A DNA stretch of 63,646 bases, filler included, from Octopus bimaculoides (taxonomy: Eukaryota): the NCBI RefSeq assembly GCF_001194135.2. It is 5 parts of 4 records of this genome, joined end to end, with 100 filler letters (N's around TTAATTAATTAA, not from the genome) between each part and the next. Parts side by side here need not be neighbours in the genome. Positions count along the whole stretch, not along the records: positions 1 to 14,431 come from NC_069007.1; 4 more parts are not named here. One strand, 5' to 3'. The notes below the pieces were generated by a model. The model worked only from the letters and a program-made list of their open reading frames with translations. It had not been told where the DNA came from and ran no database searches. Positions 2,349 to 10,040 of the stretch are shown here, piece after piece. Positions within the stretch are counted from its first letter, which is position 1. Every line of letters starts with the position of its first letter. Position numbers and translations under genes: made by a program.

Positions 2349-2417
2349 CTGTTGATACTGAGGAATTAGGGAATGCTGCAGCAAAAGCTGCATCAGTGGT
2401 AAATGCTGATTCTCCGG
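2349..2417 (-). CDS. PICALM: Likely downstream 69-nt symmetric exon of the same AP180/CALM-like gene (xGESAFTTDAAFAAAFPNSSVST)
   Basis: Acceptor tttcatttgattttctAG|CC and donor ACAG|GTaaat; phase 1 to 1, compatible with the phase-1 end of exon 9328-9013; Phe-spaced low-complexity peptide typical of endocytic adaptor tails. Confidence 0.6.
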
Positions 2418-3639
2418 CTAGAAAATCAAATGAAATAAAATAAAGAACACAAATATTAAATGGTACCCTACAGAAACACACATTTATTCTTTCGATAATT
2501 TCAGTCATTGGACAACAGCCATGTTAGGGGTTTTTAGAACCATCTTAGGGGATTTTAGATGATTGATTCTCATACTTTGGTACTTATTTTATTAATTGCT
2601 TTTGCTGAATGGTTAAGTCCCAATTAAGATACATAACTTGGAAGAGACAACAAAAGGTACTTTTGTTTGATGCACCAAATTTCCCAACCATGTTCTTTTG
2701 CCAATAAACAACAACATGTACACATGTGATGAAATTTCTGCACAGTTTCCGTGCACCAAATTTCGTTGACAGGGCATGGCTTATCTTGATGCTTTGGAGA
2801 TGATACTTGCCTATGTTTCTGCATACAGGGATTGAAATGAAAACAATGAAATTGTTAAGAAGTGAACACTATTAACCAAGCAACTATGCCTACACACACA
2901 TCATCACATGTCCACAACAATTTTTGTTTCATTTAACGAATGTCTAATTAAAATGAGAAGGGGTAAAGGATGAGGTCTGTGGAATATAAGTATGGGTTCT
3001 ATGATTTGGAGGAAAATCATATAAAGGTTTTGTGCCAATTTAAGTTTGGAAACTGGGCTACACGAGGACCACTTAGGTATGGACTGAGTTCATAGATCAA
3101 ATCCAGCTTGAAACTACGTACTCAGGAATAAGACAATTGATGATGATCGGGCTAAATTGATTGAAACACAGTACAGATGGGAATATAAAAAAAAAAAACA
3201 ATATGGTAAACAAATACCAGGATTGGTAGATCACCAGATAATATGCTGAGTATTATTGGATGTCTTAAATTATTTTGCATTCTCAGCTCAAATCCTACTC
3301 TTACCCAATTTGCTTTCCATCCCACCTGGGATTTAAAGAGTCCAACACAAGGTCCAGCATCCTTGTTGCAGTGTGGTAGCTTGTATGCTTCAATGACCCT
3401 GAGAGTTATTCCAGCAGAGTGCAAGCCCCTGGTAGAGCTTCCCATATTGGACAGATCAAAGGATTGGGGCCCATACTAGTATGGACCACCTCTTCCCAGA
3501 GGTAAAAAATAGGTTTGTGTAGAGCCAATACCCCTCCCTAGAAATGAGCAAAGCTAGAGTAGGGTCAACAATTCCAAAACCAGCAAGACCTGGGTGAAGA
3601 AGGCCATCCCTTAGGGGAACCTGACACAGTTCAGAAAAA

Positions 3640-3887
3640 TCTGAAAATAAGCGGGAATGGTTAGGCCACACCTTAAGGAATCTAACTGCAAGCAGGCCCT
3701 GATTTGGAACCCACGAAGGAAGCAGAAGAGCGGATGCCCTAAAAACTGCTGGAGATGAGATACTGAGGTAGAGCTGAAAAAACAGAGATTCAACTGCAGA
3801 AAAGAGACAGTCTAGAGTCAAGAACAGTAAAGAAAATTTGTTGATAGGCTCTACTCCACAGGGAGCTAAGGGCTGAAGTAAGTAAGG
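3640..3887 (+). mobile_element. RTE-clade LINE 3' end, degenerate
   Basis: EWLGHTLR..KQALIWNPRRKQKSGCPKNCWR resembles the RTE C-terminal [29 protein letters not shown]; ends in a GAAGTAAGTAAG tail. Confidence 0.7.
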
Positions 3888-4299
3888 TAAAAAAAATAAG
3901 CACTAGGAGTGAAGTAAGTGATTCTGCTCTAAAAGGTGATGCCCCAGTATGGCCATAGTCCAATGAGTGAAACTACTTAAAGAATGAAACAAATCTTTAA
4001 AGATGAGGGTTAGTAATCTGAAAAATTTAAATCTTATCATGAATAAAAATGAAATATTTTAGCGAGTCATTTATACAATTTATTCATATTTTCATGGATA
4101 AATCACATGGAAGCAACTGAAATGAGATGAGATATATAACTAGGTTAGTCATTGGTTGAGCAACTCTGATCAGGTGGAGACCAAGTGACTGATGAGGTTT
4201 TTTTCCCCAATGGTGAATGCTAAAAGCTGAGATAAAACCAGAAGGATATGTAAACCTAATTTGAGAGAGAGAAAAACAATTTAAATTGAGAATTGAACA

Positions 4300-5045
4300 C
4301 CAGTAATGTTTGTCAAACAAGCAATTGATGCAGGATTTGAATCGGTTCAAAATGGTGAATTTCAGTAGGAGTGTTTATCAAACAAGCAATTGACATGGTT
4401 TGAATCAAAACCTGTGACGTGATGAACGTCAGTGTTTGTCAAACAAGCAATTGACACATGGTTTGAATAAAAATCAGTGCTGTGTACTTCGGTTACATGT
4501 TTGTCAAACAAGCAATTGTCAAACAAGTGCTTTGAATTCAGATCAGCACAGCAAATGTCAGTAATGTTTGTCAAACAAGCAACTGATACATGCTTTGGTT
4601 TATATCAACAGTGAATTTCAGTAATACGTTTGTCAAACAAGCAACAGATATGTGCTTTCAATTCGCATCAGTGCAGTGAACGTTAATAATGTGTTTGTCA
4701 AACAAGCAATTGATACATGCTGTAATTAACATGCTCATCAGACAAGCAATTGTCACATGCAGTGAGCCACACTGGTGAGGTGAACTAACATTGTGTTCAT
4801 CAAACAAGCAAGTGATACAAGGTTCAAATCAAATTACAGTACTGTGTAGTGAACACAGTACTGCAAGTGCTAACAATTGAGACACATTTGGCTATACCAT
4901 AGTAATAAATACATGCTTGGAGTCCTATGACTCTTGTGAATTTAGTAATGTGCTCATTGAGCAAGCGGTTGGTACATGCCTTAAGTGACATCAATGCCAT
5001 GAACTAAGCATATATGTGTTCATTGTCAAGCAAGCAACTAAAACA
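4300..5045. repeat. Degenerate minisatellite, ~12 units of ~40-90 bp (mostly 61-67 bp), with conserved core TGTTTGTCAAACAAGCAATTGA
   Basis: Core starts at 4307, 4372, 4433, 4498, 4565, 4627, 4692, 4732, 4794, ~4862, 4951 and ~5017. Confidence 0.85.
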
Positions 5046-5327
5046 TACAGCAATGAGAAAAGTGAAATGTGTTGATCATCATTTGATGTCCCGTCTCTGC
5101 TGCTTGCGGCATATTGATAGAAGAAAATCTCCCATCACATTTTATGGTCTGTTGACTGCTCCTCAAAAGATACAGCTGGCTTCTCTCCCCAACCAATAAT
5201 ATATAGCAGTATCTAGTTATATAAAGTACTGATAAATTAGGCCATCACTACAGTGGATGAACCAACCAGCATATTAGTAAATTTAAGGGCTTACTGTTTT
5301 ATGTGTGTGTACATGTAGATATATGTG

Positions 5328-5363
<36 letters not shown>

Positions 5364-5372
<9 letters not shown>

Positions 5373-5625
5373 TAGTTACAGAATAAAAGCATTACATTTG
5401 GGTCAACGACTCAACATACAACAGTCCCCTCAATAAACAATCATATATAAAGAAATACATCAAAGTCCACAAAAACATAAGAAAATATATATTAAAAAAT
5501 AATAAAATGATATAAAAAAAAAAAAAATTTTTTTTAATATATATATGATCGTTTATTGAGGGGACTGTTGTATGTTGAGTCGTTGACCCAAATGTAATGC
5601 TTTTATTCCGTAACTAATAATTTTA
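5364..5625. repeat. Near-perfect inverted repeat, 86-bp arms, 90-nt A-rich loop
   Basis: 5364-5449 versus the reverse complement of 5540-5625: 84/86 identical; the left arm directly follows a (TA)n run. Confidence 0.95.
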
Positions 5626-7090
5626 CATCCCTGTCTCAATTAACTTGAGCACTTCTCTTTGCAGCCCTGTAAAAAACTAATTTGTTTCCTAATTACTATT
5701 ACCTATATATATACACACATATATACACATACACACACAAACATGAGTGAGTAGGCAACCGAAAGGGCACTCAACACATTTATTAGGAGTTACATGTATG
5801 GATCAAAACAGTTTGATTCAAACTCCCTGGTACTCTGAATGAGAGATTGAGTGAAGAGAGTCAATGTTTAATACAAGACATTAGCTGTATGTATATATAT
5901 ATGTATATATATATATATATATATGATCAACATCACATTGGTGGATAAAGATTCTTTATTTGTGAATTAATTTGTGAATTACCATTAGTTTCATGTTAAG
6001 GAAGACCTCAACAATTATCAAGCCTCTCACATGGAACATCATTGTTCATGTGATGTGACAGGCTTGAAAACTGTTGCAGTCTTCCATAACATGAAACCAA
6101 TGATAGCCTTAATACATAAAGTGTGTGTGTGTGTGTGCGTAACAGATGGGTCGTCTATTCTTCCTACCTTTAACCAGTCAACTGTGTAAGTAGCATTTTT
6201 GACTGACCACCAGTGAAGCAAGGCTGAGCTAACAACAAGTTAGTGTGACTTGCAGTAAAGCGGAAAGAGCAATGTAAATGTTTCAGCCAAGAGGTCCTGT
6301 GAAGAAAAGATTCCCTTCAAAGAGAGGAGCAGGAAGGGTCAGAAATAGCCCCTGCTCAGATGTCTGGAGTGAAATATCAATGAGACTTCACTTCTCCCGT
6401 ATATCACAATGACATTATATATTTGCTAGCTTTATGGACCTGGTCTTTTTTTTTTTATTAACACAGTTCTCACCCGACTCCCACCTCAACCACTGAAGGT
6501 AACAGTTTCTTATGATCCTCAGATTTTCCTGGTCTGACATTTTTTTACGTAGGGTGCACTTGATGTCTCCTTCAATGAGCTGACACAATGCAAAAATGTG
6601 CATCAGTAAAATGCTTTGTTTTGAACTCAGAACAATGTGATCTCAAATATGCCAGAACTTTAGTGTCATCAAGTAAGCCCAGCATTCCAGATGTGCTAGA
6701 AATAACAGCCAAATCTTCCTTAAATCATATGCTGGCAAATATATAAATAAAGGTATTTTCCTCTTATCATCAGCTAATATTTTTTTTATCAACAGCCAAT
6801 ATTTAAGTAAACTAGTGAGACACGTAGCTAGATGATCAGAGGACTTTCAGAACAATTATTACTACCTCATGGAGAAAGAAAAGAACAAAGAATTAGGTGA
6901 TTGTTTCTTTCAATATTTTTTTACTCTTGTTTTCAATGAAAAGCCAAATTTAGAAGCATTTAACTTAATCCTGAAATATATTTCTTTGCTGGAGTGCAGC
7001 ACTGGAATAAATGAATTATATTGATGTTATAAAACAAGAATTCTTCTATGTATTAGCAACAGAGGTATTTGAGATCATGTTTGGTCTTAC

Positions 7091-9012: not shown

Positions 9013-9328
9013 CTTGGTTTGTGGCATTCATGGCGGGGGATGCTGGTTTCGCTGTCCAGCCCATCGAAGTCATTGTGGTGGTTTGACCAGGTGACACTGC
9101 ATTTGTGGGAAGACTGTCGACGAATGGGTTAGTGGAGGCAGACAGACCGAGCAGGTCACTGATTGGTTTTGCGGGTTGTGTGGTTGTCAAACTAGTATCG
9201 AGGAGCAGGTCAGAGGTGACGGCCTCTGCTGGGCCACTGCTGAATGGGTTCGTCGACGCATACGTAGCTGGCTGATTCTGTGGGGAGGTCTGTGGAGAGG
9301 TCTGGTTTAATTCCTTAATTCGTTGATC
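9013..9328 (-). CDS. PICALM: Internal coding exon of an AP180/CALM (PICALM/SNAP91/lap/unc-11 family) clathrin-assembly protein, start of the disordered post-ANTH region
   Basis: Acceptor atctcttcccAG|GAT and donor CAAG|GTatat; 316 nt, phase 0 to 1. Open frame DQRIKELNQTSPQ...STNPFSS...SDLLLD...SDLLGLSASTNPFVD...MGWTAKPASPAMNATNQ. DQRIKEL matches the exon-initial EQRLKEL of PICALM as I recall it; NPF and DLL motifs are typical of AP180/CALM. Confidence 0.75.
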
Positions 9329-9906
9329 CTGGGAAGAGATATCAAACAATTATATATATNNNNNNNNNNNNNNNNNNNNNNNNNNNNNNNNNNNNNNNNN
9401 NNNNNNNNNNNNNNNNNNNNNNNNNNNNNNNNNNNNNNNNNNNNNNNNNNNNNNNNNNNNNNNNNNNNNNNNNNNNNNNNNNNNNNNNNNNNNNNNNNNN
9501 NNNNNNNNNNNNNNNNNNNNNNNNNNNNNNNNNNNNNNNNNNNNNNNNNNNNNNNNNNNNNNNNNNNNNNNNNNNNNNNNNNNNNNNNNNNNNNNNNNNN
9601 NNNNNNNNNNNNNNNNNNNNNNNNNNNNNNNNNNNNNNNNNNNNNNNNNNNNNNNNNNNNNNNNNNNNNNNNNNNNNNNNNNNNNNNNNNNNNNNNNNNN
9701 NNNNNNNNNNNNNNNNNNNNNNNNNNNNNNNNNNNNNNNNNNNNNNNNNNNNNNNNNNNNNNNNNNNNNNNNNNNNNNNNNNNNNNNNNNNNNNNNNNNN
9801 NNNNNNNNNNNNNNNNNNNNNNNNNNNNNNNNNNNNNNNNNNNNNNNNNNNNNNNNNNNNNNNNNNNNNNNNNNNNNNNNNNNNNNNNNNNNNNNNNNNN
9901 NNNNNN

Positions 9907-9907
<1 letters not shown>

Positions 9908-9967
<60 letters not shown>

Positions 9968-10040
9968 GAGATAGATAGATAGATAGATAGAGAGATAGAT
10001 AGATTGAGAGATAGATAGATACACACACACACACACATAC
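9908..10040. repeat. (AGAT)n and (CA)n microsatellite next to a gap
   Basis: Directly visible. Confidence 0.95.

What the first reader, a model, noticed from the sequence alone, without database searches (positions are those of the whole stretch)
4300..5045. CRISPR-like intronic array: conserved palindromic core with faster-diverging spacers
About 12 units share TGTTTGTCAAACAAGCAATTGA. It contains a perfect TGTTTG-T-CAAACA inverted pair (forkhead-type half sites) and the palindrome CAATTG. The 35-45 bp spacers are much more diverged, and the core decays progressively toward 5045. Periods of 61-67 bp are mostly not multiples of 3, so the array is non-coding. The spacers keep traces of a shared ancestor (CATG.TTTGAAT...CAGTGAA), so this is an old minisatellite in which the core appears preferentially preserved. 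One reading is a homotypic Fox or RNA-binding-protein site cluster regulating the synaptic AP180 gene or its alternative exons.
Basis: partly seen in the sequence, partly recalled or inferred. Interest (0 to 1): 0.7.

Follow-up and report, generated by a model that had tools for sequence, protein, structure and literature searches.

The report
Intronic minisatellite with one conserved box
A non-coding stretch of about twelve head-to-tail 61-67-bp copies sits inside a gene's intron; a 17-22-bp box in each copy has stayed almost unchanged while the rest has mutated nearly beyond recognition. This suggests the box is a protein docking site, but that kind of repeat is already known and no function could be tested here.

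Summary
The array is real. It has nine clear units (4302-4852) and three decayed ones, reaching about 5075. Periods are 61-67 bp. It occurs on one strand only and nowhere else in the 14.4-kb piece.

In units U1-U7 the 22-bp box shows 0.27 inferred changes per site against 1.34 outside it (P about 8e-6). The box has no indels. Transversions alone are 7-fold rarer in it, so CpG decay does not explain the contrast. The spacers are homologous but close to saturation.

Three corrections apply:
- The best-kept stretch is the asymmetric TCAAACAAGCAA, not the palindrome's left arm and not CAATTG.
- The perfect TGTTTG-T-CAAACA palindrome is confined to the 5' block.
- No canonical forkhead site is present.

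The array is not coding. No unit-wise RNA hairpin, Rfam family or tRNA was found. "CRISPR-like" is only a visual analogy.

The array lies antisense in a predicted 6.6-kb intron between two phase-compatible minus-strand exons. The DLL and NPF motifs fit AP180/CALM, but no homologue was found.

Best reading: a conserved-box minisatellite whose box is a protein-recognition site. I could not decide whether the constraint acted at this locus or in a mobile or satellite family, because no cephalopod genome was reachable. It is a new member of a known kind, of moderate-low interest.

The parts
4283..5075 (.). Whole tandem array: a leading partial spacer, 9 clear units and 3 decayed units.
   Evidence: The left edge is sharp. 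By eye, GAGAATTGAACACCAGTAATG at 4286-4306 resembles a unit tail. The right edge is fuzzy.
4307..4371 (+). U1, 65 bp; box 4307-4328 is identical to the consensus.
   Evidence: E 8e-15.
4372..4432 (+). U2, 61 bp; box 4372-4393 has 1 mismatch (TGTTTATC).
4433..4497 (+). U3, 65 bp; box 4433-4454 is identical to the consensus.
   Evidence: E 3e-18.
4498..4564 (+). U4, 67 bp; box 4498-4519 has 1 mismatch. GTCAAACAAG is duplicated at 4503-4512 and 4518-4527.
4565..4626 (+). U5, 62 bp; box 4565-4586 has 1 mismatch (CAACTG).
4627..4691 (+). U6, 65 bp; box 4627-4648 has 3 mismatches (CGTTTG..., CAACAG).
4692..4731 (+). U7, truncated to 40 bp; box 4692-4713 is identical to the consensus and the spacer is cut to about 20 nt.
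4732..4793 (+). U8, 62 bp; box 4732-4753 has 5 mismatches (TGCTCATCAGACAAGCAATTGT).
   Evidence: (E 8e-15).
4794..4857 (+). U9, 64 bp; box 4794-4815 has 3 mismatches (TGTTCATC..., CAAGTG).
4858..4950 (+). U10, a composite of about 93 bp. A box remnant at 4858-4879 matches 11/22; the second half is a spacer-like segment with no box.
   Evidence: (4905-4940, E 1.9).
4951..5016 (+). U11, 66 bp; box remnant 4951-4972 matches 13/22.
   Evidence: (E 4e-4).
5017..5075 (+). U12, a vestigial unit. The box remnant carries a 3-nt insertion (GTTCATTGTCAAGCAAGCAACTAA).
   Evidence: (E 0.02).
9013..9328 (-). Predicted upstream exon A, 316 nt. Acceptor ttcccag|GAT, donor AAG|gtatat. It encodes an S/T/P/A-rich peptide with 2 DLL and 2 NPF motifs.
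   Evidence: motif context. No homologue was found, so the gene name is unconfirmed.
2349..2417 (-). Predicted downstream exon B, 69 nt. Acceptor ttttctag|CC, donor CAG|gtaaat. Its phase is compatible with exon A. The array lies in the 6.6-kb interval between the two exons, antisense to the + strand reading.
   Evidence: the phase arithmetic was done on the printed sequence.

Best explanation
This is an old, decaying, non-coding minisatellite. It has about 12 units of 61-67 bp and lies in a 6.6-kb intron of a minus-strand gene.

Shown: a 17-22-bp box, GTTT(G/A)TCAAACAAGCAA(TTGA), evolves at least 5-fold more slowly than the rest of the unit in the seven to nine units at the low-coordinate end. 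In the last three units the box is about as degraded as the spacers.

Inferred: the box is held by purifying selection because it is the recognition site of a sequence-specific double-stranded-DNA-binding protein with a long footprint. Candidates include a multi-zinc-finger protein or a transposase-derived protein, rather than a forkhead or homeodomain protein. The array would then be a homotypic cluster of 7-9 sites spaced about 64 bp apart, giving high-avidity recruitment. At this position it would act as an intronic regulatory or chromatin-organising element.

Not resolved: whether this constraint acted at this locus, or earlier in a mobile-element or satellite family that delivered the array.
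For: The array and its units are shown.

Rate contrast between box and spacer:
- Pairwise identity is 0.926 against 0.589 in U1-U7, and a scan-statistic permutation gives P<5e-5.
- Parsimony on a spacer-only tree gives 6 changes in 22 box columns against 52 in 38 other columns, P 6e-6.
- A star-tree neutral expectation is 35.8 box changes against 6 seen, P 1e-9.

The contrast is not a mutational or alignment artefact. Transversions alone are 7-fold lower in the box, and the box has no indel column against 18/79 outside it. CpG observed/expected is the same in the array (0.32) and the window (0.30).

The spacers really are homologous but near saturation, so the units are old.

The left edge of the conserved block is sharp in the per-column profile, and TCAAACAAGCAA is exact in 8 units.

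Other uses of the sequence were tested and failed:
- There is no periodic ORF.
- There is no Rfam family and no tRNA.
- There are no unit-wise hairpins; MFE is -6 to -19 kcal/mol with inconsistent shapes.
- Whole-array z-scores are -1.1 and -2.4.
- The consensus fold is -0.6 and -3.4 kcal/mol with 0 compensatory pairs.

Precedent exists for short tandem repeats that share a 19-bp dyad-containing box amid 32-51 % identical monomers, interpreted as a protein-binding constraint (PMC8097292).
Against: - There are no binding, accessibility or expression data and no orthologous or paralogous copy, so selection is inferred from a single locus.
- Units of one array are not independent lineages. Box-limited gene conversion would give the same pattern.
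- The box matches no transcription-factor consensus convincingly: no canonical forkhead site, and only generic short hits such as TGTCA and CANNTG.
- The last three to four boxes have been allowed to decay.
- Two box variants lie in blocks (U1-U7 against U8-U12), which could reflect amplification history rather than function.
- The spacing of 61-67 bp is too variable for strict helical phasing.
Confidence: 0.45

Rival explanations
1. The array is the internal tandem-repeat region of a mobile element or a copy of a dispersed satellite family. The box was conserved by selection on the element, for example as a transposase or host-factor site, not by any function at this locus. Here it is a passive, decaying insertion.
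For: - In molluscs, short arrays of about 6 monomers regularly form the central part of Helitron/Helentron elements, next to a microsatellite, and the same repeats also occur standalone (PMC8268682).
- A TG/TA microsatellite block at 5300-5365 lies 230 bp from the array.
- The neighbourhood is rich in transposable elements: a decayed LINE tail at about 3640-3895 and a 268-bp MITE-like palindrome at 5361-5628.
- The left edge of the array is sharp.
- Family-level selection would explain a conserved box with saturated spacers without requiring a host function.
Against: - There is no second copy of the unit on either strand in 14.4 kb.
- No terminal inverted repeats flank the array. The best inverted match of the flanks, 11 nt at 4133/5213, scores 22.0, which equals the shuffle mean (P 0.47).
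- No target-site duplication was recognised.
- Pattern scans of the metagenome and viral collections gave only unrelated repeats. Those collections evidently do not hold this animal's genome, so that result is uninformative.
Confidence: 0.3
2. This is a neutral minisatellite in which the box is kept uniform by a sequence-limited turnover process, not by selection. Either short-tract gene conversion or the box acting as the preferred breakpoint for slippage and illegitimate recombination would do this. The box would then be a recombination-promoting motif.
For: - Rearrangement scars touch the box. GTCAAACAAG is duplicated 5 nt apart in U4 (4503-4527). The second half of U10 lacks a box. The U7 spacer is cut to 20 nt just before the next box.
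- The two box variants are distributed in blocks.
- The spacer-only tree does not separate the U1-U7 block from U9 and U10, as expected if the boxes were exchanged independently of the spacers (the tree is weak).
- Conserved motifs at monomer junctions have been proposed as promoters of satellite rearrangement (PMC3694981).
Against: - Conversion tracts would have to be about 20 bp long with the same sharp edges in every unit (profile), which is unusual.
- The 6+6 palindrome is too short and AT-rich for a stable hairpin or cruciform. As RNA it folds at -6.3 kcal/mol on one strand and does not form on the other.
- The best conserved part lies outside the palindrome.
Confidence: 0.15
3. The constraint acts on the pre-mRNA. 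Read on the gene-sense (minus) strand, each unit carries UCAAUUGCUUGUUUGACAAACA, which is GU-rich and YGCY-like. Several units also carry GCAUG. The array would be a distal intronic splicing regulator, for example of the 69-nt downstream exon.
For: - The array lies within the predicted intron, upstream of a 69-nt cassette-sized exon.
- GCATG occurs 6 times on the sense strand and 0 times on the other strand within the array.
Against: - The array is 1.9 kb from the downstream exon and 3.9 kb from the upstream one.
- GCAUG lies in the spacers, is absent from 6 of 12 units and is less conserved than the box. Only one full UGCAUG is present.
- There is no conserved RNA structure.
- The box matches no well-defined RNA-binding-protein motif; this rests on my own knowledge and was not tested.
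Confidence: 0.07
4. The array is a tandem cluster of small-RNA precursors such as miRNAs or snoRNAs. The 22-nt box would be the mature product, and the period of about 64 nt would be the hairpin length.
For: - The box length (22 nt) and the period (61-67 nt) are suggestive.
- The array is intronic.
Against: - No unit folds into a consistent hairpin that pairs the box with the spacer. MFEs are -6 to -19 kcal/mol and most z-scores are above -2.5.
- There is no periodic structure in whole-array folds.
- The consensus fold has 0 compensatory pairs.
- Rfam matches reach at most 20 bits, against gathering scores of 37-315.
- No C/D box pattern recurs across units.
Confidence: 0.02
5. The array is a CRISPR-like adaptive array, meaning identical repeats separating acquired, unrelated spacers.
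For: There is only a visual resemblance: a conserved stretch of about 22 bp alternating with variable stretches of about 40 bp.
Against: - The spacers are homologous to each other and share blocks such as CATG-TTTGAAT and CAGTGAA. They therefore arose by duplication and divergence, not by acquisition.
- The context is a eukaryotic intron with splice sites and microsatellites.
Confidence: 0.01

Closest known systems
Conserved-box tandem repeats: the 19-bp box repeats of Meloidogyne holocentromeres (PMC8097292) and the CENP-B box in alpha satellite.
   Same: Both have short monomers (45-84 bp in Meloidogyne) in short arrays. The monomers are highly divergent (32-51 % identity) yet share one 17-19-bp box that contains a dyad. 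The box is read as a protein-recognition site held under constraint.
   Different: Those boxes are shared by many arrays genome-wide and are tied experimentally to CenH3 or CENP-B. Here only one array of about 12 units is known, it lies inside a gene's intron, and there are no binding data. The Meloidogyne box is GC-rich, whereas this one is AT-rich. A centromeric role is not suggested.
Short satellite arrays inside molluscan Helitron/Helentron and MITE-like elements (PMC8268682).
   Same: Both are molluscan. Arrays have about 6-12 monomers and are scattered in euchromatin and introns. A microsatellite lies nearby, and the same repeat may occur standalone.
   Different: No element termini, conserved flanking boxes or second copy could be found here. 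Monomers in those families are usually longer (130-2000 bp) and are homogenised along their whole length.
Arrays of binding sites carried by retroelements, such as the 12 Su(Hw) sites of the Drosophila gypsy insulator (from my own knowledge, not checked here).
   Same: Both have about a dozen copies of a conserved core separated by poorly conserved AT-rich spacers. The array works by multimerising one DNA-binding protein.
   Different: The gypsy spacing is about 25-30 bp and its core is about 12 bp. That array is part of a defined element's 5' UTR. Here the carrier and the binding protein are both unknown.
Intronic VNTRs and homotypic transcription-factor-site clusters acting as enhancers or silencers.
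   Same: Both are intronic minisatellites whose repeated unit carries a candidate binding site, so copy number would set site number.
   Different: Typical VNTRs are young and homogeneous along the whole unit. This one is old, with saturated spacers and only the box preserved.
CRISPR arrays
   Same: Both show alternation of a conserved stretch of about 22 bp with variable stretches of about 40 bp.
   Different: The spacers here are diverged copies of one ancestral spacer. The array is eukaryotic and intronic, with no acquisition machinery. It is not a member of this family and does not work like one.

Membership tests
Minisatellite (tandem repeat with 10-100-bp unit) | Head-to-tail copies of one unit of 10-100 bp. 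| tested here: met
   TRF finds periods of 63 and 65. There are 9 strong and 3 weak profile matches, all on one strand and contiguous.
Minisatellite (tandem repeat with 10-100-bp unit) | Non-coding: no periodic reading frame. | tested here: met
   Periods of 61, 62, 65 and 67 are not multiples of 3. The longest ORF is 70 aa and reads the box in different frames.
Minisatellite (tandem repeat with 10-100-bp unit) | Copy-number variation between individuals. | not testable with these tools
   Only one sequence is available.
Conserved-box satellite or tandem repeat | A short box is significantly better conserved than the rest of otherwise divergent monomers. | tested here: met
   0.27 against 1.34 changes per site, P 8e-6; transversions are 7-fold lower; the box has no indels.
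Conserved-box satellite or tandem repeat | The box is shared by many arrays or families in the genome. | not testable with these tools
   No genome of the source organism could be reached. No other copy lies in the window.
Conserved-box satellite or tandem repeat | The box is bound by a specific protein. | not testable with these tools
   This needs EMSA, pull-down or ChIP.
Forkhead-site homotypic cluster | A canonical forkhead core (GTAAACA/TGTTTAC, or at least RYAAAYA) in each unit. | tested here: not met
   There are 0 canonical sites. The loose consensus occurs 7 times, at 9.0 per kb against 4.1 per kb in the background.
Forkhead-site homotypic cluster | Conservation centred on the half-sites. 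| tested here: not met
   The left arm TGTTTG varies in U2, U6, U8, U9, U11 and U12. The invariant part is TCAAACAAGCAA, which extends 6 nt beyond the inverted pair.
CRISPR array | The spacers are unrelated to one another. | tested here: not met
   Spacers align with score 19.3 against 4.4 +/- 1.1 for shuffles and share blocks.
CRISPR array | Prokaryotic or viral context with an adjacent leader and cas genes. | tested here: not met
   The array is flanked by spliced exons, microsatellites and a LINE tail.
Tandem miRNA or snoRNA cluster | Each unit folds into a stable, conserved hairpin or carries box motifs, and covariation keeps the pairing. | tested here: not met
   Searches show 0 compensatory pairs. 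There is no Rfam match near a gathering score.
Internal array of a transposable element (Helitron, Helentron or MITE) | Element termini (inverted repeats, a hairpin or conserved boxes) and a target-site duplication flank the array. | tested here: inconclusive
   The best inverted match between the flanks is no better than shuffles. Helitron-type ends cannot be recognised without a family consensus.
Internal array of a transposable element (Helitron, Helentron or MITE) | Many dispersed copies share the same flanks. | not testable with these tools
   There are none in the window, and no source genome is available.
AP180/CALM host gene | Sequence homology to AP180/CALM (ANTH domain or assembly domain). 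| tested here: inconclusive
   The word-indexed library gave no hit. Exhaustive HMMER gave one repetitive 2326-aa protein at E 2e-7. PDB gave none. No ANTH exon lies in the window.
AP180/CALM host gene | A disordered assembly domain with DLL clathrin motifs and, in invertebrate members, NPF motifs. | tested here: met
   Exon A encodes SDLLLD, SDLLGL and 2 copies of TNPF in an S/T/P/A-rich stretch. The motif definitions come from PMC4194041. This is suggestive only.

The most novel reading that the evidence does not exclude
The array is locus-specific and maintained by the host. It would be a bank of 7-9 high-affinity sites for a long-footprint DNA-binding protein, for example one of the lineage-expanded C2H2 zinc-finger proteins of cephalopods. 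In that reading it serves as an intronic regulatory or chromatin-architectural element of a synaptic endocytosis gene, with the box kept over a time long enough to saturate the spacers.
Probability: 0.2. Interest if true: 0.55.

Novelty: new member of a known kind. Interest (0 to 1): 0.3.

Why it matters
If the box is a real binding site, the array gives a ready-made 22-bp probe for fishing out a sequence-specific DNA-binding protein in an animal group whose regulatory code is almost unknown. It would also be an example of a tandem repeat kept as a multi-site regulatory module inside a neuronal gene.

If the unit instead belongs to a dispersed family, it marks a mobile element or satellite with an internally conserved recognition site. 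That is useful for repeat annotation but has no special consequence for the gene. In either case the statistical signature, a box at least 5 times slower than a saturated spacer, is clean and could be used as a genome-wide screen for similar arrays.

Tried and rejected
1. Small-RNA cluster. Whole-array folds, 36 unit-window folds and alignment folds on both strands show no unit-wise hairpin and no covariation. Rfam found nothing at gathering thresholds, and only chance-level hits at E up to 10.

2. tRNA- or SINE-like units. GGTTTGAATC in the spacers resembles a decayed box B. ARAGORN finds no tRNA in the window, and the box cannot form an anticodon arm.

3. Terminal inverted repeats around the array. 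The 11-nt perfect pair at 4133-4143 and 5213-5223 looked promising, but local alignment of the flanks scores 22.0, equal to the shuffle mean (P 0.47).

4. A link to the LINE fragment upstream. Its ORF2 tail ends near 3895, 400 bp before the array, so no connection is evident.

5. CpG decay as the cause of fast spacers. This is rejected because transversions alone show a 7-fold contrast.

6. Relatives elsewhere.
- A two-box pattern scan of the metagenome collection (50 loci) and the viral collection (3 loci) gave only unrelated repeats that happen to contain the 12-mer. None matches the unit profile at E<=1e-3.
- Exact look-ups of two window ORFs found nothing.
- A full-text search for the 12-mer found only Drosophila hsp70 primer sequences.

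7. Gene identity. The protein searches returned nothing usable.

9. Polarity of the palindrome. I first read TGTTTGTC as derived from TGTTCATC. Without an outgroup the two block-wise variants cannot be polarised, so I make no claim.

10. I ran no further search on the array's 70-aa ORF. The failure to recover even the exon showed that the libraries lack this genome.
Full report
**What is there**

Reading 4000-5400 shows a head-to-tail array on the + strand. None is expected from 200 dinucleotide-preserving shuffles. Tandem Repeats Finder reports periods of 63 and 65, and the repeat finder gives a 9-copy family.

A profile HMM built from the first nine units recovers those nine at E 3e-18 to 2e-12 (4302-4852). 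It also recovers U11 (4944-5006, E 4e-4), U12 (5015-5039, E 0.02) and a trace of U10. Nothing else scores below E 0.05 on either strand of the 14.4-kb piece.

Start-to-start periods are 65, 61, 65, 67, 62, 65, 40 and 62, then about 64, 93 and 66. U7 has lost the second half of its spacer. U10 is a composite whose second half has no box. U4 carries an internal duplication of GTCAAACAAG (4503-4512 and 4518-4527). The array starts sharply at about 4283 with a partial spacer tail and fades out at about 5075.

**Box against spacer**

In a MAFFT alignment of the twelve units, mean pairwise identity in U1-U7 is 0.926 for the 22 box columns and 0.589 for the other 38. The best 22-column window coincides with the box and was never reached in 20000 column permutations.

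Units share ancestry, so I also counted parsimony changes on neighbour-joining trees, including a tree built from spacer columns only.

| Units | Box changes per site | Other columns, changes per site | P |
|---|---|---|---|
| U1-U7 | 0.27 (6 changes) | 1.34-1.37 (51-52 changes) | 6e-6 to 8e-6 |
| U1-U9 | 0.59 | 1.8 | 2e-5 |

- The contrast is not due to CpG decay. Transversions alone are 0.026 against 0.191 per compared site, and CpG observed/expected is equally low in the array and the window.
- It is not an alignment artefact. No box column has an indel among the full-length units, against 18 of 79 columns outside.
- A star-tree neutral expectation from spacer divergence predicts about 36 changes in the seven boxes; 6 are seen (Poisson P 1e-9).
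- The spacers are truly homologous. Global alignment score is 19.3 against 4.4 +/- 1.1 for shuffles, with shared blocks CATG-(G/C)TTTGAAT and CAGTGAA. They match at only 59 % of positions against 52 % for shuffles, which is near saturation.

The units are old and the box has been protected.

**Corrections to the description**

- The really invariant stretch is GTTT(G/A)TCAAACAAGCAA. TCAAACAAGCAA is exact in 8 units, and CAAACAAGCAA has one mismatch in two more.
- The CAATTG palindrome is not conserved as such. It reads CAACTG in U5, CAACAG in U6 and CAAGTG in U9.
- The perfect TGTTTG-T-CAAACA inverted pair exists in only five units.
- U8, U9, U11 and U12 share TG(T/C)TCAT instead, and U2 has TGTTTAT. 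Two box variants therefore sit in blocks, U1-U7 against U8-U12. Which is ancestral cannot be decided without an outgroup.
- The palindrome is weak as a structure. As RNA it folds at -6.3 kcal/mol on the + strand and does not form on the gene-sense strand.

**Context**

On the minus strand there is an open, GC-richer segment with a good acceptor (ttcccag|GAT at 9328) and donor (AAG|gtatat after 9013). It encodes an S/T/P/A-rich peptide with two DLL and two NPF motifs.

Downstream at 2417..2349 lies a 69-nt segment with acceptor ttttctag|CC and donor CAG|gtaaat. Exon A ends with one extra base and exon B begins with two, so they join in frame.

The array therefore lies in a predicted 6.6-kb intron. 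It is 3.9 kb from exon A and 1.9 kb from exon B, and it is antisense to the reading used above.

DLL and NPF motifs in a disordered domain fit an invertebrate AP180/CALM (PMC4194041). Homology could not be shown. The word-indexed library gave nothing. An exhaustive HMMER search of 1.84 billion representatives gave one repetitive protein at E 2e-7. PDB gave nothing.

**What it is not**

- It is not coding.
- It is not a known RNA. There is no Rfam match at gathering thresholds anywhere in the window. In a permissive scan of the array the best hits reach 20 bits or less, against cut-offs of 37-315. No tRNA was found.
- It is probably not a small-RNA cluster. The 22-nt box and the period of about 64 nt suggested one, so I tested that.
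  - Whole-array folds have z-scores of -1.1 (sense) and -2.4 and no periodic structure.
  - Thirty-six unit-sized windows fold at only -6 to -19 kcal/mol with inconsistent shapes.
  - Alignment folds give -0.6 and -3.4 kcal/mol with no compensatory pair.
- It is not CRISPR-like in any mechanistic sense, because the spacers are diverged copies of each other.
- It is not a forkhead-site cluster in the usual sense.
  - The array has no GTAAACA/TGTTTAC, and the loose RYAAAYA consensus is only twice the background.
  - The left arm is the least conserved part of the box.
  - The protected stretch (17 or more bp) is much longer than a forkhead footprint.
- The Rbfox reading is weak. GCAUG occurs six times on the sense strand, but in spacers and in only some units.

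**Is it part of a mobile element or a dispersed satellite?**

Within the window there is no second copy. The flanks have no significant inverted repeat; the 11-nt pair at 4133/5213 scores exactly the shuffle mean.

A two-box pattern scan of the metagenome and viral collections returned 53 loci. All are unrelated repeats, and none matches the unit profile. Exact ORF look-ups found nothing. These collections evidently do not contain this genome, so the negative results carry no weight.

The literature shows that in molluscs, short arrays of about six monomers commonly form the centre of Helitron/Helentron elements next to a microsatellite, and also occur standalone (PMC8268682). The window is rich in transposable elements, with a LINE tail and a MITE-like palindrome. 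A TG/TA microsatellite lies 230 bp from the array. This rival stays strong.

**Most likely mechanism**

What is shown is a rate contrast of at least 5-fold, confined to a sharply bounded box of 17-22 bp, in units old enough for their spacers to be near saturation.

The simplest cause is purifying selection on the box as a recognition site for a sequence-specific DNA-binding protein with a long footprint. That makes the array a homotypic bank of 7-9 sites. This is an inference.

The same signature is known from conserved-box tandem repeats. One example is the 19-bp dyad-containing box shared by 45-84-bp monomers that are otherwise 32-51 % identical in Meloidogyne (PMC8097292). The CENP-B box of alpha satellite is another.

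I put 0.45 on this reading, without deciding whether the selection acted here or in a parent element family. The rivals are:
- A purely passive mobile-element or satellite-derived array gets 0.30.
- Box-limited conversion, or the box as a recombination-promoting motif, gets 0.15. It has some support from the rearrangement scars at boxes and from the block-wise variants (precedent PMC3694981).
- A pre-mRNA element gets 0.07.
- A small-RNA cluster gets 0.02.

**Verdict**

This is a real and statistically clean observation of a known kind of object: a conserved-box minisatellite in an intron. Interest is moderate-low unless a genome-wide search shows the array to be locus-specific and conserved across species.

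Noticed in passing
window 5361-5628: A 268-bp palindromic MITE-like element. Its arms, 5361-5449 and 5540-5628, are 89 nt long and 97 % complementary, separated by an A/T-rich 90-nt centre. It starts at the end of a (TA)17 run, so it looks like a young insertion.
   Followed up: partly
window 5976-6109: A 126-134-nt hairpin with 53-nt arms that are 85 % complementary. As RNA it folds at -74.9 kcal/mol (z -13.4) on the gene-sense minus strand, against -58.3 (z -9.4) on the plus strand. All four transition differences between the arms give G.U pairs on the sense strand, which alone is only P about 0.06. It has no Rfam match. It could be a foldback element or a sense-strand structured RNA or ADAR-type substrate.
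   Followed up: partly
window ~3640-3895, + strand: A decayed LINE ORF2 C-terminal tail with stops (...WNPRRKQKSGCPKNCWR*DTEVELKKQRFNCRKETV*SQEQ*RKFVDRLYSTGS*GLK), followed by an AAGT/A-rich tail. It ends 400 bp before the array.
   Followed up: partly
window 9013-9328 and 2349-2417, minus strand: Two predicted exons with canonical splice sites and compatible phases. The first encodes 2 DLL and 2 NPF motifs, and the second is a 69-nt cassette-sized exon (GESAFTTDAAFAAAFPNSSVST). No homologue was found in 5.8 billion clusters, 1.84 billion representatives or PDB.
   Followed up: yes
window 9360-9906 and 9907-10021: A 547-N assembly gap lies directly next to exon A's acceptor region. It is followed by (ATAG)29 and (AC)n, so the upstream intron boundary region is unassembled.
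   Followed up: no
window 2519-2559: A 21-bp tandem duplication, CCATCTTAGGGGATTTTAGAA, in 2.0 copies at 90 % identity, about 100 bp upstream (gene sense) of exon B.
   Followed up: no
whole window: CpG observed/expected is 0.30 at 35 % GC. Microsatellites are dense: TA, AC/TG, ATAG, ATAC-type and (CAT)8. This fits a CpG-depleted, repeat-rich animal genome. The organism could not be identified with the tools.
   Followed up: no
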